A DNA stretch of 63,916 nucleotides, counting the filler, from Octopus bimaculoides (taxonomy: Eukaryota): NCBI RefSeq assembly GCF_001194135.2. It is 4 parts of 4 records of this genome, joined end to end, with 100 filler letters (N's around TTAATTAATTAA, not from the genome) between each part and the next. Parts side by side here need not be neighbours in the genome. Positions count along the whole stretch, not along the records: positions 53,578 to 62,765 come from NC_068984.1; 3 more parts are not named here. The stretch is one strand, 5' to 3'. Below are positions 53,578 through 62,865 of this stretch, piece by piece. Both the position numbers and the translations under genes were made by a program. The notes under the pieces are model-generated. The model was not told the origin of the DNA. It worked only from the letters and a program-made list of their open reading frames with translations, and did not search any database. Numbering within the stretch: position 1 is the first letter of the stretch; every line of letters starts with the position of its first letter.

Positions 53578-53763
53578 CCAGAAAGGAGAAAGCTAATTCG
53601 AAGGTTACAGATCCAATCCATCACTGGAACTGTAAAAATCTGTAAAACTTTCCAGAAGTTTATCAGTTAACTATATATGAGCATGTCTAGATATGCAACT
53701 ATATGCATGAGAATACATACATAAAGCAAAACATACAAATCTGCACATACATACATACATACA

Positions 53764-53795
<32 letters not shown>

Positions 53796-53945
53796 CATAC
53801 ATACATACATACATACATACATACATACAAAAATACCCTGTGTTGGTGTGGAAATTCCAATGAAGGAACATTGGATCTAGGTTAGAAATCGGTTCTTTTT
53901 CTATTGGCAAGAAATCTTGAAATAAATTGAATAATGGCATACATA
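53578..53945 (+). mobile_element. 3' end of the same RLE LINE with internal and terminal (CATA)n
   Basis: ccagaaaggagaaagctaattcgaagg...catgagaatacatacataaagcaaaacatacaaatctgc-(CATA)n-...ttggatctaggttagaaatcggttc...-(CATA)n. Confidence 0.75.
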
Positions 53946-54813
53946 CATACATACATACATACATAGTACATACATAGTACATACATACGTACATACATAC
54001 ATATATAAGCATGCATTTATACTTGCGTATGTACAAACATGGCCAGGCGTTCCGTCGGTTACGATGCCGAGTGTTCCAGTTGATCCGATCAATGGCACAA
54101 CCGACTCATGAAATTAACGTGTAAATGGCTGAGCACTCCACAGACACACGTAGCCTTAACGCAGTTCTCAGAGATATTCAGCGTGACACAGAATGTGACA
54201 AGGCTGGCCCTTTTGAATTTACAGGTACTACTCACTTTTGCCAGTTGAGTGCACCGTAGCAACATGAAATAAAGTGTCTTGCTCAAAGACACAACGCGCC
54301 GCCGGGAATCGAACTCACGACCTTGCCGTGAGTCCGATACTTAATGTACATACATCGATGACAGTCAAATTACTGCGGTATTCATAGGAGATAACGTCTC
54401 TGATGGACGTGCTGTGTTTAGAAGCACTGTATTTAGCGGAGGGAGACGAAAAATCGTTCCAGCAGCAGCAGCAGCATCTCTCTCGAACGAAAACCTCTGT
54501 AACTTGCCTTTCAATGATATATAAGCATTAAGGATGATACGTAGATGGCTATTTTTATTTAATACTGCTTCATATATATATATATGAAGCTCGTCGAAAC
54601 GCCGGTGTTAAAACGTGGGTAGCTGATGAAGTAGAATGTTCTCTATGTGGCTCGTGTGTTCTCGTCTACGTTTGTTTGCAATGTCCTGTACCCAGATATG
54701 CACCTATACATACAGGTGGATGTCGGTATGCACATACCTGTACGTATATATGCATATACTCATTTACTTTTATATATATATATATATATATATATAAGTA
54801 TTAAGCAGTATTA

Positions 54814-54847
<34 letters not shown>

Positions 54848-55219
54848 ATTAAACTAAATTAAACAATAGGGTAAAAAATTGGATATTAATTAATATCAAT
54901 TTAATACCAGGTAACAAGCCCATTAAAAGAATCAGGGAGATTCAGAAAAAATATCTGAGATCTCAAACGATTATTGTATATGTATATATAAGACTATATA
55001 AAAATATATATAAAGGAGGCCACTTGGTGGACTGCTAATATATATACAAGTTAAATTTAAATTTTAAAAAACTAAGGTTTAGCAAGGAGGTGTTTGGATG
55101 CGTTGCATCTGATGTCATTACATCGTCCTCTGCCCACGAGGGAACAGTACAGAATGAAGCCGAAACAATTGCTATGCTAATAAAGCTTCTAGTTATACTC
55201 CTTCCGTATCAATCATTTA

Positions 55220-55271
<52 letters not shown>

Positions 55272-55287
55272 ACACATACATACTTAC

Positions 55288-56745
55288 CACAAATATAAAC
55301 AAATAAAAACAATTCTACGCAAGACAGGTTCTTTGATGATGTACAGCATGCCGGGAAGTTGGCAACGTGATCTCACTGCCGTATCTGTTAGCTGTTTGTG
55401 AGCACGTAAAGGTCTCTCCTGATGCTGTTCGGATAAAATTGTGTTTACTGGCATCAATTCAGTGATTACAGCAATTTCTGACACCTCGGCTTCAATTTCT
55501 GGTAGACGGCCATTACATTTAACAGAGTTGTTTTCGTTATAAATATTGCGATCGACTTGTAACGCTTTTTGAGATATTGACGAATCGTTGTAAGTTCCTA
55601 GATACTTATCTGTTTCATTACTAGCATTTATATGTCGATCATTGTCATGGATATTATTAGGCAATGGTTTATTAATGCAAGGCATACTTTCAGTACGTAT
55701 TCCAAGGTCTTCGTTCTGAATATGTATATGAGAAGTCATTACTGCACTTAATGTTCTTTTTAAAACCATGTCATTCTTATCCGGTATCTGTTGGAATGCA
55801 TCTAGGTCGGCGTTTATACATTCTGCTTTTGTTGAATACATTTCATCAAAGTTTACACTTGTACTTATTATGTCTGTTAGTATGTTATTAGTTTGTTGTA
55901 ATTCGGCCTTTCCAATGTCTTCATTGATGTCATGTATGTCTTGGAGACTAGTGTTCTTGGCAATATTCGCTTTTGTTGGGTTTGTCCGTTTGGAAAAAAT
56001 ATTCATGGCGTCAGTATTGAGTTTTTGTGTTTGTTGGGAGACAGTGTCTTCGGTTTTGATGTCAAAATTTGTGTCTTGTACATGCTGTGAGGAGCGGGAA
56101 CTATCGTTTACAACGGCGTCTGTGTCTTCTGTCTGTTCGTGACAATTGTTTTCGATGTTAACATTTACATACACTGTCTGGTGGCAGGAAGTAGATTCTG
56201 TCAGTTGGAAGTCTCTCTGTAGATGTTTGTCTGTATTTACAACCAAGCCTTCAAGACAAACATTTGAACTGTCGACATTTCTGATTTCAGAGTCATCGAT
56301 TTTCGCTGTATCGATATTTCTGTCTTCTGTTTGTGCAGAATTAATTTTCGAAGAGTTGACATTTATCTGTTTTGCATGCTGACCAGAAACACTTGTTATG
56401 TGGACATCTTTGTCTTGTATTCTTGGAGAAAAGCTGTTCGATGATTTGTGAGCATTGTCGACATATTTAGTGTCATTCGTGATTTGGGTAGGTATTTCTC
56501 CTGTATTGACACTTAGAGAAGGTTGAATGGAATTCAGTTTTGCAGAATCTACGACAATATCTCCAATTACATGAGACGAGGTGTCTGAATGGGAGGCTTC
56601 TGATCCCAACGGATCAAAATGGCGATAAACATACGCCACTTGGTCATAGTCAACATCGTTCTTTTTTGCAGCTTTCCTAATCAGACGTTTTGCTTCTGTC
56701 CATCTGTCTTTGGCAATTAACCAACGTATAGACTCATCTATAGAC
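55288..56745 (-). CDS. SLC22-family transporter, giant exon encoding the TM6-TM7 loop and TM7 start
   Basis: ctgttttag acceptor, gtaagt donor; 1458 nt with no stop, phase 2 to 2. Begins (W)SIDESIRWLIAKDRWTEAKRLIRKAAKKN (E-S-x-RWL motif) and ends IIKEPVLRRIVFICLYLW. Confidence 0.85.
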
Positions 56746-57823
56746 CTAAAACAGTGAGAGGCAAGGGATTATTCTGCAAAAGAATCAAACCGAAGAAGTA
56801 GTTTCATGGTGAAGTAACATACTAAAGGTCACTTTAAAAAGATGTCGTTGGAATTAGTAAGAAAGAAATGCGACAAGTGATAAAAAGTATCACCAAGATA
56901 AAATAAACAAAAAGCTTAAAAACAGTCACCGCTGCTACCACCATCATTATCACCGCCACCAACGTCGCGATTAACAACAACAGGAACAGGAAACAAAATA
57001 ATAATTAGCTATAATAAAGCTTACTCATTGCATATAATATTGTCAACATGCATTGTGTTTTCCATGTAAAATGTCTATACTGGGTGGGTGGAAAGGCAGT
57101 GTTAAACTGAGAGAAGGATTAAGTATGTCACTCAATGTTAAGTCCCACTGCTTTTCATTAACGAAATATTAATCAACTTGCATTAATTAAAAACACTACT
57201 GTTAATTACATGCTTGATGAACAATAATAACACATAATATCTAAATACATGATCTAGTGAAAGTCATTATTATTGTTTTCGTAGAATCCCGTATCAGAGC
57301 TGATTAGACAGACGATGACTGAAGATATTCTGGTCATGACCACCATGTCTTTTCAGGCTTGTTTTGTCCCGAGCTACGTTACCCAGAATATCCCCCGCTC
57401 GATACTTTTCTGAAAGGTGGCGGAATGCGTGATTTGAGAGAGATTTGGTTGCTATGTCTAACAGGTTGAGCGACCATGCACGGAGCAAAATGTAGGACTC
57501 ATCTTTGATTTGAGCAAAGAGAATGTTAAGCGTTCTGGTTCATGCCGATGACGAGCGATATACAGTAATAACATGTAAACTATTTAATAACGAACGCCAA
57601 TCATAAGCACCGCGGCTCCATTAAGTCTGGACTACCATCAGACAACGTGCTATATCAACAACAAGGATTATATAACAAAACAACAGCAACAGCAACAAAA
57701 CAAAATACGAATGTAGCGTGAGCAAAATTAATTTACAAACATTTGGGGGAATCTTTATGTAATAATTAACGAACATACACGAATAAATAAAAGACAATAT
57801 ATTTTTTTCTGGAGAGAACTTAC

Positions 57824-58026
57824 CATATCTCAAATAAGGAAGGACAGAAGAACAAGGCGAAAACAGCATGTAATATTCGCCAATTGAAATTTCGGAAAAT
57901 GTAAGCTATTGGCGCCATCATCATCACGCCAGAAACCCACATCACTCCACCAAGTAGTAGAACATGGGTTCGATTTTCTGTAGGGAAAAGCTCGGCTATC
58001 ATTATAGTTCCTGGCACATTCATACC
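57824..58026 (-). CDS. SLC22-family (organic cation/anion transporter-like) MFS transporter, TM4-TM6 exon
   Basis: ttttctcctag/gtaagt boundaries; 203 nt. GMNVPGTIMIAELFPTENRTHV...YIFRNFNWRILH...LFEIW carries the SLC22 motifs ELFPTxxR and WRxL. Confidence 0.88.
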
Positions 58027-60309
58027 CTAGGAGAAAAGTGTAAAGGAACAAAAAAAAAAAGATAAGTGACGTATCATATTTGCCGGCGTAAGATGCACTC
58101 ACACGTAAGATGTACCTCCATTTTACAAGTATATTTTGTAGAAAAAATAAAGTATGTTTTATCATACATACATCCATTGAAAAATATTTTGAAACGTTTT
58201 TTTTAGGGGATGCTGTATGATTCGTGCTTGTAAATATAATGCTATAAACAGAGTATTGGAATAAAGTATGGAACCATAAATTTCTCATATATAAACTGTT
58301 ATGCGGATAGCGTATTTCAAATTAACCTTCTTTGTGATAAACTGTGTAGTAGATTATATTTTAGCCAAGAGAATTTCCAAGCAGGACATAAAACTCTCAT
58401 TTTTAGCTATGATGTCTTGTTATTGCAATCGTTCACCAGGTTGGTGCACTACCGCTATGATTTTGTCATCCACTCATTGTAAATAGTTGATAAGCGAACG
58501 AAACTTTAACGGACCTTTTATCTTTCTGGGAGAATTTGCATTTAGTTAATTGGAAAAAAATGTTTCTTAAATGTAGCACAATCACTTATAATCACTTATA
58601 ATAACTTATAATAACTTATAATAGCTTATAATACAAATCAAGTGTGAGCAATGTATACTGGGGAAGAGATATAATGAAATGATATGACTTCTCAACGTAA
58701 CTGCCGGCGTACAATTAGCAATTTTTCGTTAGGTTGTGGTACCAGACTACAATATTTTGGATTGTTTTCAATATCTTATGATTAGTTAAGGTGGCGAGCA
58801 GGTAGAATCGTTAGCACGCCGGGCAAAATGCTTAGCGGCATTTCGTTCGTCTTTACGTTCTAAGTTCAAATTCCACCGAGGTCGACTTTACCTTTCATCG
58901 TTTCCGGATCGATGAAAATAAGAACCACCTGTGTATTAGGGTCAATGTAAGCGACTTAGCCCCTCCCCCGAAGTTACTGGCCTTGTACCAAAATTTGAGA
59001 CCAAAATTTTATGATCAGTAACAATTATTGTGCCTAGAGGACTTATGCTTATCCGCTTCCGTAGCCAATGACACTCGGCTTCCGTCTGCAATACAGCCAT
59101 ATTAGACGCTGGGCACTTATTACGTCTTATACGTCGGCAAGCACATTATGTTAAACTATTTTGTATATTAGGCCAACCAGAATCTCATTTTTAGTCTGAA
59201 ATCAGTATTGGTTGAACATTATTAAAGTCTTTCTAGTTATAACCATACTGTCTTTTATTCATGGGAGAATTCACGAAAAAACAACAGACGAAGACAGGTG
59301 ATGTTAACAATAAACAGATATATTAGTATAACGCTCGGGAATAGAGAAAGTTTTTAACGTTTCGAGCCTACGCTCTTCAACGGAAAGGAGCACACAAAAA
59401 AAAACAAGGAGAGAAAAAAATATATAGAAAGAAAGTCTCTACTCATCACACACTAACTTATGACTCTCTACCTTTTTTCATTCTGGACTATTTATTGTGG
59501 ACTTTTTTATTCTGAACTTTGCACTCTCCGGCTGCACCTCTCCTGCCTACGGATTACGCTGTACCTATCTACTGTCTTTTATGCAGTTTATCAAAGACTA
59601 TATCATCTAACATTTCTAGACAAGAGTATTGAAGACATAACTACTATTTCTAGCAAACGGAGTGATCATAGAGAAGTTTCCTCATTGTTTCATGTTGCGG
59701 GGAAATATTTTTATTCTTAACTAAATTACTAATAAGAAGTAGCTGTCTTTTAACACCAGGTCAGCCTGATCGGGCATACTTTTGATTAAATGCATTCACG
59801 CCATGATATTACTGTCTTTTTCTTTTCAAGCATAGAGTACACTGGACTATATTATCGAATGCATTCTTTTAAGTAGGCCATGGTGCGTCATGGATTTGGG
59901 TGCTATTTCTACCAGCTCGAAAAACCACGTGGAGGGTCTCGCGCTGTCTCATAAATTATTCAGTTTATCATAAATAGGTCACTATTTTATTCGGTGTACT
60001 ATAAATAAATCACAACTATTAGCTGGTGAGCCATTAGTAGGTCAGTCTTCTAATCAGGGTACCAGAATTAGGACAATATTGTAAACAGTGTACAATAAGT
60101 AGGTTAGTACTTTTAAACAGCCAACTATAACTGCCTTTAGTGTTTTTGTTTCCTTTGTGGTATATTCCCAAGAAGAGCAACATCTTTTGTCCGAGTATCT
60201 ACCACTCTATCTTCCAACATCTGAAAAATGATGGAAACATATGTAAAGAATTACACCCTTTACCACCTTCACTATTTTTCTCTCTTCATTAGTTGGTCAT
60301 CAGAACGAA

Positions 60310-60490
60310 ACAGCGATTTCTCTCTTACATCACACCCCAGTGATTTATCTCTTACGTCACACACACAAGCGATCTTTCACCTATGTCACACACCAACAAT
60401 TTCTCTCCCACGTCACACACCAGCGATTCCTCTTCTACGACATTTATCAGTGATTACACTTCAGTGTTACACACCAGTTATTTTTCTTCC
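60310..60490 (+). repeat. About 27-bp minisatellite, about 7 diverged units
   Basis: Unit approximately cagcgatttctctcttacgtcacacac. Confidence 0.7.
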
Positions 60491-60494
60491 TTGA

Positions 60495-60860
60495 GAACTT
60501 TGTCGGAAACAATTTTGCTGCCTTTGACGTCGTCAGCAAAGCTTTCAACTCGGTTTAACATGAAAATCTTTTAGCTAAGTTGCTTGGCTAAAGTGCTTAT
60601 CCATTTAATCATCTCTAGAATCGAAAGTATCCTACCAATGTACACCATCTCAGTGTACGGTCTCTTTCATTTTTCTCTCTCCTTCTCTCTCTCCCCTCTC
60701 TCTCTTCCTATCAACTTTAGTGTACTTCAGGGTTCGGTTACGTCTCATATTTTTCTGCTGTATATCAATGACCTATTGCCTGTCACTACCAACAAAATGC
60801 ACACATTCTCTTCCACAAATCATACAACTTTTCCATTTCTCATCAAACTTCTGTCGAAAG
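60495..60860 (+). mobile_element. Jockey/CR1-type LINE RT remnant
   Basis: SETILLPLTSSAKLSTR (~DISKAFDRV); SVLQGSVTSHIFLLYINDLL (~GVPQGSVLSPTLFLLYINDL). Confidence 0.65.
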
Positions 60861-61397
60861 GCTCCATCTACATGCAGCCTACACAAGCTTGCACAGTTTC
60901 CATGAAGGGAGTCTTTGAAAACATCCACATATAAGGACATATCAATACTAAAACAGTTAACAATGCCAAAGAGTAATCGCTACATATACCGATATGAATA
61001 TACACATATCAAAGAAAAAGCTTATGTTACATTCCTCTCTATACTCTTTTACTCTTTTACTTGTTTCAGTCATTTGACTCCGGCCATGCTGGAGCACCGC
61101 CTTTAGTCGAGCAAATCGATCCTAGGACTTATTCTTTGTAAGCCTAGTACTTATTCTATCGGTCTCTTTTTACCGAACTGCTAAGTTACGGGGACGTAAA
61201 CACACTAGCATCGGTTGTCAAGCGAAGGTGGGGGGACAAACAGACACACAAACATATACACACACATATATATATATATANNNNNNNNNNNNNNNNNNNN
61301 NNNNNNNNNNNNNNNNNNNNNNNNNNNNNNNNNNNNNNNNNNNNNNNNNNNNNNNNNNNNNNNNNNNNNNNNNNNNNNNNNNNNNNNNNNNNNNNNN

Positions 61398-61456
<59 letters not shown>

Positions 61457-62146
61457 CATATATACGACGGGCTTCTTTCAGTTTCCGTCTACCAAATCCA
61501 CTCACAAGGCTTTGGTCGGCTCGAGGCTACAGTAGAAGACACTTGCCCAAGGTGCCACGCAGTGGGACTGAAACCAGAACCATGTGGTTGGTAAGCAAGC
61601 TACTTACCACACAGCCAAGAACTAAAACTTTACGATCGTTGCAATTGTCCAGAATCTCTGATGACTCACAGCAGTTTATCACATAAAACATAGGCAAAGC
61701 TGTATTAAAAGGCTAAGTTTCGTCTTTAAAGCTCAACAACAATTTAGCCTCGATCATTTTCAGATTAGTTTTTAAAGCTCAAATAATATTCCTATATAGA
61801 ATCAAATATTTAGTATAAGTTTAAGGGAACCGAGAAGAGGAAACACAGTTAACTAGTCCGGAGGGTAATACGATTGTTGAAGTATTACTGATAGAATATT
61901 CAGAGAGGACATTGCACGTCTAAGTACCAATGGTTATAGTGTGCTCATATACGTAGGACAACTCTACTGCTACCCTAATAAAATCTGTAGAACAGTTGTT
62001 TGCAAACAGTGCAGCGCAGCATTTCATCTAATTTAAGGCTTTTGAAAATTCATGCTGACCCTTGAGCTTCCTGTAAAACATTATCAAAAATTTTGTTGTA
62101 CAGAAATAGGAGTATTTAAACGAAGTAAGCAATAGTTTTCCGTGTA

Positions 62147-62346
62147 CGAGGGATGCTGAAAAGTTCCTGGTGTTAAGGGTATCGTGAAAGGCCTGGTTGA
62201 GGCCCAACCTTCTGAGTTCTTTTACAAAGCATCGAAAAACTGAAGGACCGTTGTAATAAATGTTTGAATCTGAGAGGGGAATATGTTGAATAAAATCCTC
62301 CTGTATTTTCTGTTACTCAAAGCCAGGAAGTTTTCAGCATCCTTCG
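62147..62346 (+). mobile_element. 200-bp mariner deletion derivative (MITE)
   Basis: TIRs CGAGGGATGCTGAAAAGTTCCTGG / CCAGGAAGTTTTCAGCATCCTTCG; left TA; encodes the mariner C-terminus IEKLKDRCNKCLNLRGEYVE*. Confidence 0.85.
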
Positions 62347-62352
62347 TGTATG

Positions 62353-62388
<36 letters not shown>

Positions 62389-62389
62389 G

Positions 62390-62735
62390 GCAAAGGTGGG
62401 CACCGCTAATCAAAAAGTTAACGTCGTTAACCGTTAATCCGTTAACCAAAAAGTTAACTTCGATGACCGTTAACGTTAATCGTTGTAGAAAAACAATAAA
62501 AAATCAGTTTTTGCTTTAAAACCACCTAAAAACACCTTTAAAAAGTGCCAAAACTATAAAATACGTTAACTTCAATTCAATTGAAGTTAACGGAAGTTAA
62601 TTTAATTGACTTGAGTTAACGGAAGTTAATCAGTCTGATAATGATTTCCAAAGTTAACTTAAAAGTTAAATCGTTAACGAAAATGTTAACTTCGTTAATT
62701 GACAATTAACGAATTAACAGTTTGGTGGCCAGGTT
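62390..62735. mobile_element. GTTAAC-rich hAT-like non-autonomous element
   Basis: About 11 GTTAAC palindromes in about 330 bp; left end caaaggtgggcacc; right end only partly complementary. Confidence 0.5.
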
Positions 62736-62865
62736 TTTATATAGCCCGAACACTTTGTATATATANNNNNNNNNNNNNNNNNNNNNNNNNNNNNNNNNNN
62801 NNNNNNNNNTTAATTAATTAANNNNNNNNNNNNNNNNNNNNNNNNNNNNNNNNNNNNNNNNNNNN

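What the first reader, a model, noticed from the sequence alone, without database searches (positions are those of the whole stretch)
55288..56745. SLC22-type transporter with a ~465-aa central cytoplasmic loop in one 1458-nt exon
Seen: between the post-TM6 motif ESIRWL..EAKRLIRKAAKKN and TM7 (EPVLRRIVFICLYLW) lies a stop-free, hydrophilic D/N/T/S/Q/E-rich stretch of over 400 aa with no TM segment. Established: SLC22 central loops are about 60-70 aa and hold regulatory phosphosites. Inference: 485 open codons in such AT-rich DNA imply selection. The protein may be a lineage-specific transporter or transceptor with a large disordered scaffold, or a loop that uncouples the two MFS halves.
Basis: partly seen in the sequence, partly recalled or inferred. 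Interest (0 to 1): 0.72.

Follow-up and report, generated by a model that had tools for sequence, protein, structure and literature searches.

The report
Octopus SLC22 transporter with giant disordered loop
This is one real coding exon of an already annotated but unstudied Octopus bimaculoides organic-ion-transporter (SLC22) gene, in which the cytoplasmic linker between the two halves of the transporter has grown to about 470 residues of fast-evolving, probably unstructured protein; it is unusual in size but probably not a new mechanism.

Summary
On the minus strand, 56745..55288 is one exon with good splice sites. It has 485 codons and no stop, against 41 and 31 stops in the other two frames, and no transmembrane segment. 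Its translation is identical to RefSeq "uncharacterized protein LOC106876873" of Octopus bimaculoides.

The conserved ends of the exon are the canonical SLC22 post-TM6 helices and the pre-TM7/TM7 start. Between them lie about 410 extra residues relative to human-type OCT2.

The ESIRWL-to-EPVLRR distance varies widely:
- 468 in three Octopus species
- 610 in Argonauta
- 238-240 in two other cephalopod transcripts
- median 60 in general SLC22 homologues
- median 85 in the nearest, mostly lophotrochozoan, relatives, with independent expansions up to 267 (Physella) and 360 (Owenia)

The insert evolves almost neutrally: dN/dS is 0.65-0.83, and in-frame indels occur at about the intron rate. Stops and frameshifts are excluded. 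AlphaFold gives pLDDT below 50 throughout the insert, while the orthologue's core folds confidently as SLC22.

The best reading is a translated, weakly constrained disordered linker expansion with a few conserved islands. Direct Octopus transcript evidence is lacking. Interest is modest.

The parts
57824..58026 (-). Upstream coding exon (exon A). It encodes GMNVPGTIMIAELFPTENRTH...CPSLFEI plus the first 2 nt of a Trp codon, covering TM5-TM6 of the N-terminal MFS half.
   Evidence: AG|GGTATG acceptor and ATG|GTAAGT donor read. tblastn of P0007, P0126 and P0004. Identical in the O. sinensis protein.
55288..56745 (-). The 1458-nt exon of the finding: 1 nt, 485 codons and 2 nt, with no stop.
   Evidence: It is 100% identical over 484-485 aa to O. 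bimaculoides XP_014781136.1 and XP_052823624.1.
56746..56747 (-). Splice acceptor AG, preceded by a 20-nt tract that is 85% pyrimidine.
   Evidence: The same acceptor is present in O. vulgaris (L002) and a third octopod (L003).
55286..55287 (-). Splice donor GT (GTG|GTAAGT).
   Evidence: It is conserved in L002 and L003. The short-loop cephalopod genomic contig L007 has TG|GTGAGC at the same protein position.
56607..56744 (-). Conserved head of the loop, exon aa 1-46: SIDESIRWLIAKDRWTEAKRLIRKAAKKNDVDYDQVAYVYRHFDP. These are the canonical post-TM6 intracellular helices.
   Evidence: Identity is 41/46 to Argonauta and 34-36/46 to the short-loop cephalopods. dN/dS is 0.09-0.25. AF2 gives helices at 2-11, 15-29 and 33-41 with block pLDDT 69-79 over residues 1-30. 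The segment aligns to OCT2 (8et9) up to residue 311.
55380..56606 (-). Lineage-specific insert, exon aa 47-455 (409 aa): hydrophilic, with no repeats, no known domain and no TM segment.
   Evidence: pLDDT is below 50 for residues 43-468. dN/dS is 0.65-0.83. Identity to Argonauta is 29%, against 91% for the core. No significant Pfam hit. No tandem repeat or self-similarity. The OCT2 alignment jumps from chain residue 311 to 315 while the O. sinensis query goes from 296 to 711.
56145..56192 (-). Conserved island 1 inside the insert, aa 185-200: TSCHQTVYVNVNIENN. It contains a Y-x-x-hydrophobic / Y-x-N motif.
   Evidence: At least 50% identity to Argonauta (QQTAYINLNMEN) in 15-aa windows. The motif reading is inference only.
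55719..55763 (-). Conserved island 2, aa 328-342: LKRTLSAVMTSHIHI. It contains R-x-x-S, a consensus for basophilic kinases.
   Evidence: Conserved as LKRTFSTVLSSNAYI in Argonauta. The kinase-site reading is inference only.
55494..55592 (-). Conserved island 3, aa 385-417: ...LQVDRNIYNENNSVKCNGRLPEI.
55288..55379 (-). Conserved tail, aa 456-485: ...RSRCQLPGMLYIIKEPVLRRIVFICLYL(W). This is the pre-TM7 helix and the start of TM7.
   Evidence: Residues 461-485 are nearly all invariant across 7 cephalopod sequences. dN/dS is 0.0-0.09. The segment aligns to OCT2 residues 315 onward.

Best explanation
The exon is a constitutive coding exon of a cephalopod-specific member of the SLC22 (OCT/OAT, TC 2.A.1.19) transporter family. 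In O. bimaculoides the gene is LOC106876873.

The protein is expected to work as an ordinary rocker-switch MFS carrier. Its two six-helix halves are very well conserved and, in the orthologue, fold like OAT1, OCT and URAT1. What differs is the cytoplasmic TM6-TM7 linker. The canonical intracellular helices right after TM6 and the short helix before TM7 are kept. Between them, about 410 residues of hydrophilic and probably intrinsically disordered sequence have accumulated.

The insert is translated and must stay in frame, because TM7-TM12 lie downstream. Otherwise it drifts almost neutrally in sequence and, over longer times, in length: about 240 residues (ESIRWL-to-EPVLRR distance) in two other cephalopod lineages, 468 in Octopus and 610 in Argonauta. 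In relatives the loop grew partly by tandem duplication.

Most likely it acts as a long flexible tether that the MFS fold tolerates. It carries a few short conserved islands that could be phosphorylation or sorting signals.

Shown: the exon structure, identity, family, insert position, its evolutionary pattern and the lack of predicted structure. Inferred: that it is disordered in vivo, that it is present in the mature Octopus protein, and any role of the islands.
For: Identity and annotation:
- The translation is 100% identical to XP_014781136.1 and XP_052823624.1.

Family:
- All 25 PDB sequence hits at E <= 1e-20 are SLC22 proteins. The best is OCT2 (8et9) at 6.7e-47, and both halves align.
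- TIGR00898 is the top NCBIfam hit at 4e-98.
- The AF2 model of the Argonauta orthologue has block pLDDT of about 80-97 across both halves. Its top 44 Foldseek hits are all SLC22 structures, and the full-length alignments have TM-score about 0.8-0.87 relative to the target.

Insert position:
- O. sinensis residues 296 to 711 correspond to OCT2 residues 311 to 315.

Translated and frame-protected:
- There are 0 stops, against 6-7 expected across three octopods (P about 1e-3).
- There are 0 frameshifting indels, against about 10 expected at the intron rate (P about 5e-5).
- All indels are multiples of 3.
- Base composition differs strongly by codon position.
- All six public Octopus models keep the whole exon.
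- A 2689-nt transcript contig (L001) with an uninterrupted 771-aa ORF keeps the homologous loop. Its protein maps to at least 10 separate genomic blocks in O. vulgaris, so it is a spliced transcript.
- A second transcript-length contig encodes the 758-aa P0134, which also keeps the loop.

Weak constraint on the insert:
- dN/dS is 0.65-0.83, against 0-0.25 for the head and tail.
- Loop nucleotide divergence is 4.7%, against about 6% for flanking introns.
- In-frame indels: 2 observed against 2.3 expected at the neutral rate.
- The loop is 29% identical between Octopus and Argonauta, against 91% for the core.

No predicted structure:
- pLDDT is below 50 for residues 43-468 of the exon and residues 340-854 of Argonauta.
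- The charge-hydropathy point falls on the disordered side: H 0.417 against a boundary of 0.437.

The site is expansion-prone:
- Loop lengths in relatives run up to 267 and 360, some with obvious tandem peptide repeats.
Against: - No Octopus RNA or peptide evidence was available here, so inclusion of the whole exon in the mature mRNA rests on conservation and on gene models.
- Low pLDDT with only 4-7 informative sequences over the loop is weak evidence for disorder. The composition is not extreme: I+V+L is about 22%, and the charge-hydropathy result is marginal.
- Three islands conserved between Octopus and Argonauta, and near-constant length among three Octopus-like species (482-484 aa), leave room for function.
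- One pairwise dN/dS is significantly below 1 (p = 0.04).
- The O. bimaculoides RefSeq models are broken downstream of this exon, so it is not shown that this species makes a full transporter.
Confidence: 0.62

Rival explanations
1. The insert is a selected, lineage-specific regulatory or scaffolding module. It would be a long disordered platform whose conserved islands and phosphosites recruit kinases, adaptors or trafficking machinery. That would make the protein a regulated transporter or transceptor.
For: - Three islands of at least 50% identity persist between Octopus and Argonauta despite 29% overall loop identity.
- These islands include a Y-x-x-hydrophobic motif (YVNV / YINL) and an R-x-x-S motif (RTLS / RTFS).
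- A long loop of at least 238 residues is retained in every cephalopod orthologue seen.
- Length is nearly constant among three Octopus-like species.
- The Ovul-Oct3 dN/dS of 0.67 is below 1 at p = 0.04.
Against: - Most of the insert evolves at close to the neutral rate, and in-frame indels occur at the neutral rate.
- Length varies 2.5-fold among cephalopods.
- The islands are not conserved in the short-loop cephalopods.
- The motif matches are short and would occur by chance.
- No domain or partner-binding module was detected.
Confidence: 0.2
2. Part of the exon behaves as an exitron or alternative intron in Octopus, so that the main mRNA encodes a much shorter loop.
For: - There is no direct Octopus transcript in the data searched. 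The 90% clusters holding the Octopus proteins contain only genome-derived models.
- Other cephalopods manage with about 240 residues.
Against: - The frame has been kept open, without stops or frameshifts, through three octopods and Argonauta.
- There is no internal GTAAGT or GTGAGT. The best internal donor-like site scores 7/9 and lacks the +5 G.
- The internal acceptor-like sites have at most 75% pyrimidine, against 85% at the real acceptors.
- All public models keep the exon.
- The transcripts of two relatives keep their whole loops.
Confidence: 0.07
3. In O. bimaculoides specifically the gene is decaying or mis-assembled, so the long ORF is a remnant and not part of a working transporter.
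For: - Both RefSeq models of O. bimaculoides lose homology right after this exon.
- XP_052823624.1 reads a non-homologous exon and then the TM8 exon out of frame. It lacks TM7-TM10.
- XP_014781136.1 contains a junk exon matching the opposite strand of the upstream intron.
- An N-gap lies in the piece at 61281-61397.
Against: - Within the piece both exons are intact with good splice sites.
- Exon A is identical in protein to O. sinensis. Of the conserved ends, the tail is identical to O. vulgaris, and the single head difference (R/K at aa 23) maps to the O. vulgaris branch.
- O. sinensis has a complete 968-aa model.
- Assembly or annotation error is the simpler cause.
- The region concerned lies outside the piece and could not be read.
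Confidence: 0.08
4. The open frame is a chance feature of an intron between two short exons (ESIRWL...KKN and ...EPVLRR).
For: None beyond the A-rich, T-poor sense-strand composition, which lowers stop frequency somewhat.
Against: - P is about 4e-15 from composition.
- The maximum of 2000 shuffles was 206 codons.
- The same open frame occurs in four octopod species with only in-frame indels.
- Base composition differs by codon position.
Confidence: 0.01

Closest known systems
Vertebrate SLC22 transporters with solved structures (OCT1-3, OCTN2, OAT1, OAT4, URAT1)
   Same: - These are the best sequence and fold matches.
- They share the 12-TM MFS core, the large TM1-TM2 extracellular domain and the ES(x)RWL post-TM6 helix.
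- They share the pre-TM7 helix and the ELFPT and LPET...LP motifs.
- The TM6-TM7 region carries the intracellular helices.
   Different: - The vertebrate ESxRWL-to-pre-TM7 distance is about 55-70 residues (median 60), against 468 here.
- About 410 residues are inserted exactly between OCT2 positions 311 and 315.
- Core identity to the vertebrate members sampled (an OAT3 and an SLC22A6) is only about 24-25%.
- The substrate is unknown.
Cephalopod orthologues: O. sinensis LOC115210859 (XP_029635475.1, 968 aa), O. vulgaris hypothetical protein, Argonauta hians GAB1606797.1 (1110 aa), and two unnamed cephalopod transcripts (771 and 758 aa)
   Same: - It is the same gene: the core is 77-91% identical.
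- The loop sits in the same single exon with the same conserved head and tail.
   Different: - The ESIRWL-to-EPVLRR distance is 468 in Octopus, 610 in Argonauta and 238-240 in the other two.
- Argonauta has tandem GDPQH.TGG... repeats.
- Mid-loop identity is only 19-29% outside Octopus.
Other lophotrochozoan SLC22-like proteins with expanded central loops: Owenia fusiformis CAH1797859.1 (about 360), Physella acuta XP_059168761.1 (about 267), Babylonia, Liolophura, Gigantopelta, Lymnaea (165-197)
   Same: - They have the same insertion site in the same family.
- The sequence is hydrophilic and low in complexity, and some carry tandem peptide repeats.
   Different: - They are not orthologous: core identity is 28-38%, and they sit on separate branches of the NJ tree.
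- Their loops are unrelated in sequence and shorter than in Octopoda.
SV2 / SVOP branch of the MFS (synaptic vesicle protein 2)
   Same: These are MFS relatives of SLC22 with an enlarged TM6-TM7 cytoplasmic loop (my own knowledge). They appear as weak N-half HMM hits and lower-ranked fold hits.
   Different: - TIGR01299 matches only the N-half, at about 1e-8 to 1e-10.
- There is no large luminal TM7-TM8 domain.
- SLC22 hits are far stronger.
- It is not a member of this branch.
Central cytoplasmic loop of MFS carriers in general (LacY, GLUT1, hPEPT1, RFC1)
   Same: The loop tethers the two six-helix bundles. A review (PMC4148622, citing Weinglass & Kaback 2000 and others) states that it is needed for efficient insertion, maturation or function.
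   Different: Those loops are tens of residues long, up to about 100. Nothing of 470-610 residues has been characterised in the papers I could search.

Membership tests
SLC22 / organic ion transporter family (TC 2.A.1.19) of the MFS | Twelve transmembrane helices in two six-helix MFS bundles (definition as in PMC7084758). | tested here: met
   This was tested on orthologues, because the piece holds only TM5-TM6 and the start of TM7. The Argonauta AF2 model has confident helices in both halves. Its top 44 Foldseek hits are all SLC22 structures, and the full-length alignments have TM-score about 0.8-0.87 normalised to the target. Both halves of the O. sinensis protein align to OCT2. A complete C-half is not shown for O. 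bimaculoides itself.
SLC22 / organic ion transporter family (TC 2.A.1.19) of the MFS | Large extracellular domain between TM1 and TM2 with conserved cysteines. | tested here: met
   In orthologues, outside the window, about 70 residues with beta strands at 58-110 lie between helices 39-52 and 126-157. C60, C86 and C126 are invariant or nearly invariant in a 40-sequence alignment.
SLC22 / organic ion transporter family (TC 2.A.1.19) of the MFS | Intracellular domain between TM6 and TM7 that begins with the ES(x)RWL helix. | tested here: met
   ESIRWL and the following helices are encoded at 56735-56607 of the window. E270, S271, R273 and W274 are invariant or nearly invariant across 40 homologues. 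The domain is present but about 7-8 times the usual length.
SLC22 / organic ion transporter family (TC 2.A.1.19) of the MFS | Scores as a member with the curated family model (TIGR00898, 2A0119). | tested here: inconclusive
   It is the top hit by a wide margin (E = 4.4e-98, 329 bits), split into two stretches by the insert. It falls below the curated cut-off of 550.75 bits. Pfam Sugar_tr and MFS_1 hits are precomputed for the orthologues.
SLC22 / organic ion transporter family (TC 2.A.1.19) of the MFS | Family sequence signatures: the (S/T)xVxEW(D/N)LVC motif before TM2, D-[RK]-x-G-R-[RK] between TM2 and TM3, ELFPT, and LPET..LPxT after TM12. The motif definitions come from my own knowledge of the family. 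| tested here: met
   These were read in the orthologues and the O. bimaculoides models: SFISEWDLVC, LADKYGRKP, PELFPTGLRN, LPETGHRQLPQSV. The corresponding columns are conserved in the 40-sequence alignment. Only ESIRWL lies inside the window.
SLC22 / organic ion transporter family (TC 2.A.1.19) of the MFS | Transport of organic cations, anions or zwitterions. | not testable with these tools
   No functional data exist. No paper mentions the gene or protein accessions.
SV2 / SVOP synaptic-vesicle MFS proteins | Full-length match to the SV2 model and a large luminal TM7-TM8 domain. | tested here: not met
   TIGR01299 matches only residues of about 121-259 (N-half) at 7e-9, 34 bits against a cut-off of 637. 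SV2A structures rank below all SLC22 structures, with TM-score 0.34-0.73.
Intrinsically disordered region (as a structural class for the insert) | No stable predicted fold, polar-biased composition, and rapid sequence and length evolution. | tested here: met
   pLDDT is below 50 across the insert in two models. The charge-hydropathy point is marginally on the disordered side. dN/dS is 0.65-0.83 and length differs 2.5-fold among orthologues. One caveat is that the alignments are shallow. Experimental disorder was not tested.

The most novel reading that the evidence does not exclude
The octopod insert is not mere drift. It would be a cephalopod innovation that turns an SLC22 carrier into a regulated hub. 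The islands conserved across Octopus and Argonauta (YVNV/YINL, KRTLS/KRTFS, LQVDR...KCNG) would act as sorting, phosphorylation or docking motifs on a very long disordered arm. These would couple transport to trafficking or signalling in a tissue-specific way.
Probability: 0.12. Interest if true: 0.55.

Novelty: new variant of a known kind. Interest (0 to 1): 0.3.

Why it matters
If the loop is present in the mature protein, this cephalopod gene carries the longest TM6-TM7 linker I could find in the SLC22 neighbourhood: 468-610 residues against a typical 60.

It is a natural experiment on how much unstructured tether an MFS rocker-switch transporter tolerates between its two halves. It also shows how such linkers grow, by tandem duplication and drift at a single permissive site that has expanded repeatedly in molluscs and annelids.

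For annotation, the conserved single-exon structure helps to repair the broken O. bimaculoides and O. vulgaris gene models.

It does not point to a new mechanism. The evolutionary pattern is what is expected for a tolerated disordered insert.

Tried and rejected
- **Pfam scan of the exon translation.** There were only sub-threshold hits (Cro, DUF3287, and the Sugar_tr edge), so the insert holds no known domain.
- **Tandem repeats and protein self-similarity.** Tandem Repeats Finder and protein self-BLAST found no repeats in the O. bimaculoides insert, although Argonauta by eye has peptide repeats.
- **Transposon or repeat origin.** The loop protein search found only orthologues. The exon DNA matches the 59-kb O. 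vulgaris locus only at the orthologous place. A transposon origin is therefore rejected as far as it could be tested.
- **Rfam and tRNA scans of the piece.** Nothing was found.
- **Literature.** No paper holds the gene or protein accessions. SLC22+octopus gave nothing relevant.
- **Naming the species behind the Logan runs.** A text search for SRR27666080, ERR12370320 and SRR11869384 gave no hits. The two short-loop cephalopods and the third octopod therefore remain unnamed, and the expansion cannot be dated precisely.
- **Neighbouring exons.** tblastn found only the two exons in the piece; the next exon downstream lies beyond 53578.
- **Long 'loops' that are artefacts.** P0022, P0184, P0258 and P0211 are fused or duplicated gene models (duplication seen directly in P0184 and P0258) and were discounted.
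- **Fold search of the exon-only model.** It was not attempted, because a mean pLDDT of 34.7 would give meaningless matches.
- **Weinglass & Kaback 2000.** The paper could not be read, so it is cited only through a review.
Full report
**1. The observation**

The piece is 53578-62765 and the gene is on the minus strand. Reading the reverse complement shows an acceptor ...cactgttttAG|G with the first exon base at 56745. The donor is ...TTTGTG|GTAAGT with the last exon base at 55288.

The exon is 1458 nt. One base completes a split Trp codon, then come 485 codons and two further bases. The coding frame has no stop, whereas the other two sense frames have 41 and 31.

- From base composition the chance of 485 open codons is about 4e-15.
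- 2000 shuffles of the exon gave a mean longest open stretch of 73 codons and a maximum of 206.
- The next longest open stretch in the whole piece is 186 codons.
- No 19-residue hydropathy window inside the loop reaches the TM threshold.
- The upstream exon is 58026..57824. It ends in ...SLFEI + TG, which joins in phase to the G at 56745.

**2. Identity**

The exon translation is 100% identical to two O. bimaculoides RefSeq proteins. These are XP_014781136.1 and XP_052823624.1, "uncharacterized protein LOC106876873". It is also identical to UniProt A0A0L8IHD5 and A0A0L8IHF4. The window is therefore Octopus bimaculoides, and the exon is already annotated as coding.

Orthologues found:

- O. sinensis LOC115210859 (isoform X1, 968 aa, complete)
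- an O. vulgaris hypothetical protein (91% identical over the exon)
- Argonauta hians GAB1606797.1 (1110 aa)
- a third octopod known only from genomic Logan contigs (75% identity)
- two other cephalopod lineages known from Logan contigs

No paper in the searchable library mentions any of the accessions.

**3. Family**

- All 25 PDB sequences matched at E <= 1e-20 are SLC22 proteins (OCT2, OCTN2, OAT1, OCT1, OCT3, URAT1, OAT4), and both halves align.
- TIGR00898, the TC 2.A.1.19 model, is the top NCBIfam hit at 4e-98. It is below its curated cut-off, partly because the insert splits the match.
- An AlphaFold2 model of the full-length Argonauta orthologue, built from a 40-sequence alignment, has block pLDDT of about 80-97 across both six-helix halves and the TM1-TM2 extracellular domain.
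- Foldseek returns only SLC22 structures in its top 44 hits; the full-length alignments among them have TM-score 0.78-0.87 normalised to the target.
- The family features listed in PMC7084758 are all present in the orthologues. They are 12 TMDs, a large extracellular domain between TMD1 and TMD2, and an intracellular domain between TMD6 and TMD7.
- In an NJ tree of the core, the long-loop cephalopod gene forms a tight clade. It lies next to a normal-loop cephalopod paralogue pair and inside a mollusc/annelid SLC22 group. It is only about 24-25% identical to the vertebrate OAT3 and SLC22A6 sequences sampled.

**4. Where the extra sequence sits**

In the HMMER alignment to OCT2 (8et9), O. sinensis residue 296 (...AKKND) pairs with chain residue 311. 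Residue 711 pairs with chain residue 315. About 410 residues are therefore inserted at a single point.

The first 46 exon residues are conserved: SIDESIRWL...RHFDP, with AF2 helices at 2-11, 15-29 and 33-41. The last roughly 30 are also conserved...CQLPGMLYIIKEPVLRRIVFICLYL. Identity to Argonauta is 41/46 for the head and 26/29 for the tail, and dN/dS is 0-0.25. These two ends are the canonical intracellular helices and the pre-TM7/TM7 start.

**5. How unusual the length is**

I measured the distance from ESIRWL to EPVLRR-equivalent positions.

| Sequence set | Distance (residues) |
|---|---|
| Octopus spp. | 468 |
| Argonauta | 610 |
| Two other cephalopod transcripts | 238-240 |
| 125 homologues from the word-based search, these cephalopod sequences included (the rest vertebrates, insects, plants, environmental sequences) | median 60; 52-125 outside the cephalopod clade and one fused model |
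| 121 nearest 50%-identity cluster representatives | median 85, with a tail |

The tail of the last set includes Physella acuta 267, Babylonia 197, Liolophura 183, Gigantopelta 176, Lymnaea 165 and the annelid Owenia fusiformis 360. Several of these carry obvious tandem peptide repeats. Four larger values came from fused or duplicated gene models and were discounted.

In lophotrochozoans, however, this site has expanded repeatedly. The octopod loop is the extreme of a trend and not a singular event. It is not met for this length, but it is partly met in spirit.

**6. Is it translated, and is it selected?**

I aligned the exon of O. bimaculoides with O. vulgaris (L002) and the third octopod (L003). 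All three are open from acceptor to donor, and their three indel events are 3, 6 and 3 nt.

- About 178 substitutions lie on the three-taxon tree, and 3.4-3.8% of possible single-base changes create stops. That predicts 6-7 stop-creating events. None is seen (P about 1e-3).
- Flanking introns between O. bimaculoides and O. vulgaris have 16 indel events in 1617 aligned bp, of which only 3 are multiples of three.
- At that rate the insert should have about 12 events, of which about 10 would shift the frame. It has 2, both of 3 nt (P(0 frameshifts) about 5e-5).
- Base composition differs strongly by codon position.

The frame is therefore protected. But amino-acid constraint is weak.

- dN/dS in the insert is 0.65, 0.83 and 0.67 for the three pairs. 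Only one is nominally below 1 (p = 0.04).
- The head and tail give 0-0.25.
- Nucleotide divergence of the insert (4.7%) is close to that of the introns (about 6%).
- The number of in-frame indels matches the neutral expectation, 2 against 2.3.
- Over longer distances the insert is 29% identical between Octopus and Argonauta, where the core is 91%. It is 19-23% identical to the short-loop cephalopods, where the core is 77-78%.

That much is expected for anything lying upstream of TM7-TM12. It does not show that the loop sequence itself does something.

**7. Transcript evidence**

No Octopus transcript was found in the collections. The clusters holding the Octopus proteins contain only genome-derived models.

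The indirect evidence is as follows.

- All six public Octopus models keep the whole exon.
- L001 is a 2689-nt contig with an uninterrupted 771-aa ORF. Its protein maps to at least 10 separate blocks over 41 kb of the O. vulgaris locus, so it is a spliced mRNA, and it retains its 240-residue loop.
- P0134 (758 aa, on a 2926-nt contig) does the same in a second lineage.
- The corresponding genomic contig L007 shows the loop as one exon with the same boundaries.
- Inside the O. bimaculoides exon there is no GTAAGT or GTGAGT, and there is no acceptor with a pyrimidine tract as good as the real ones.

An exitron-type isoform cannot be excluded but is unlikely to be the main product.

**8. Structure of the insert**

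- AlphaFold2 on the exon with a 7-sequence alignment gives mean pLDDT 34.7, with residues 43-468 below 50.
- In the full-length Argonauta model, residues 340-854 are below 50 while the core is above 90.
- The charge-hydropathy point (H 0.417, net charge 0.066) falls just on the disordered side of the boundary at 0.437.
- There is no Pfam domain, no tandem repeat and no internal similarity.
- There is no sign of a repeat or transposon origin.
- The alignments are shallow over the loop, so this evidence is suggestive and not proof.

Three islands keep at least 50% identity between Octopus and Argonauta:

- aa 185-200, TSCHQTVYVNVNIENN
- aa 328-342, LKRTLSAVMTSHIHI
- aa 385-417, ...LQVDRNIYNENNSVKCNG...

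They contain Y-x-x-hydrophobic and R-x-x-S patterns. Reading these as sorting or kinase sites is my inference only.

**9. Mechanism and verdict**

The most likely account (about 0.6) is an ordinary SLC22 carrier whose inter-domain tether has been inflated by a tolerated, disordered, nearly neutral insert at a site that is permissive across lophotrochozoans. A few short motifs may be under selection.

The rivals are a selected regulatory scaffold (about 0.2), partial removal by splicing (about 0.07), a decaying or mis-assembled gene in O. bimaculoides (about 0.08) and a chance ORF (about 0).

It is a new variant of a known kind. The gene is annotated but unstudied. Interest is modest (0.3).

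Noticed in passing
Outside the piece (downstream of window 53578); seen in proteins P0123, P0007 and P0001: The public gene models are broken after or around this exon. O. bimaculoides XP_052823624.1 continues with a non-homologous exon. It then reads the TM8 exon out of frame: 'NWTEENVYSFPEYRRWES' is the frameshifted 'IGRKKTCILFQSIAGGS'. It lacks TM7-TM10. The O. vulgaris model skips exon A (TM5-6) and carries an unrelated N-terminus. O. sinensis X1 (968 aa) is intact and could serve as a template to repair them.
   Followed up: partly
window 58842-58907 (+ strand): Residues 746-768 of the old model XP_014781136.1 ('ICLYHVLNSNATEVDFAFHPF') match the opposite strand of the intron upstream of exon A at 70% over 23 aa. 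This is probably a repeat-derived junk exon in that model.
   Followed up: no
window 61028-61617, around the N-gap at 61281-61397: An interspersed repeat. This stretch matches at least four dispersed places in the 59-kb O. vulgaris locus L002 at 73-91% identity. An assembly gap of 117 N sits in its middle, flanked by (AC)n and (AT)n.
   Followed up: no
window 55221-55269: A perfect (TG)24.5 microsatellite, (CA)n on the coding strand, starts 19 nt after the donor site of the big exon. O. vulgaris and the third octopod also have CA-rich sequence there.
   Followed up: no
window 60311-60439; 53745-53829 and 53938-54007; 62403-62473: A 27-nt tandem repeat (4.7 copies), (ACAT)n / (CATA)n arrays and a 36-nt repeat lie in the introns. 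They produce the spurious C/M/Y-rich and H/T-rich 'ORFs' in the ORF list.
   Followed up: no
P0005 (Argonauta hians) residues ~340-500; P0218 (Physella); P0182 (Lymnaea): The central loops of relatives contain clear tandem peptide repeats: GDPQH.TGG.TR..I in Argonauta, SQKNNDQTKTL about 7 times in Physella, and IKPDEALDILSKAQT 3 times in Lymnaea. This points to replication slippage or tandem duplication as the way these loops grow. The O. bimaculoides insert shows no such repeats any more.
   Followed up: partly
P0003 versus P0134 (short-loop cephalopod, genomic versus transcript-length contig): The genomic-contig protein and the transcript-length protein of the same 90% cluster differ at scattered positions in the loop (by eye a few per cent of loop residues, not computed). 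These could be species or allele differences or, in a cephalopod, RNA editing. I did not examine the nucleotide changes.
   Followed up: no
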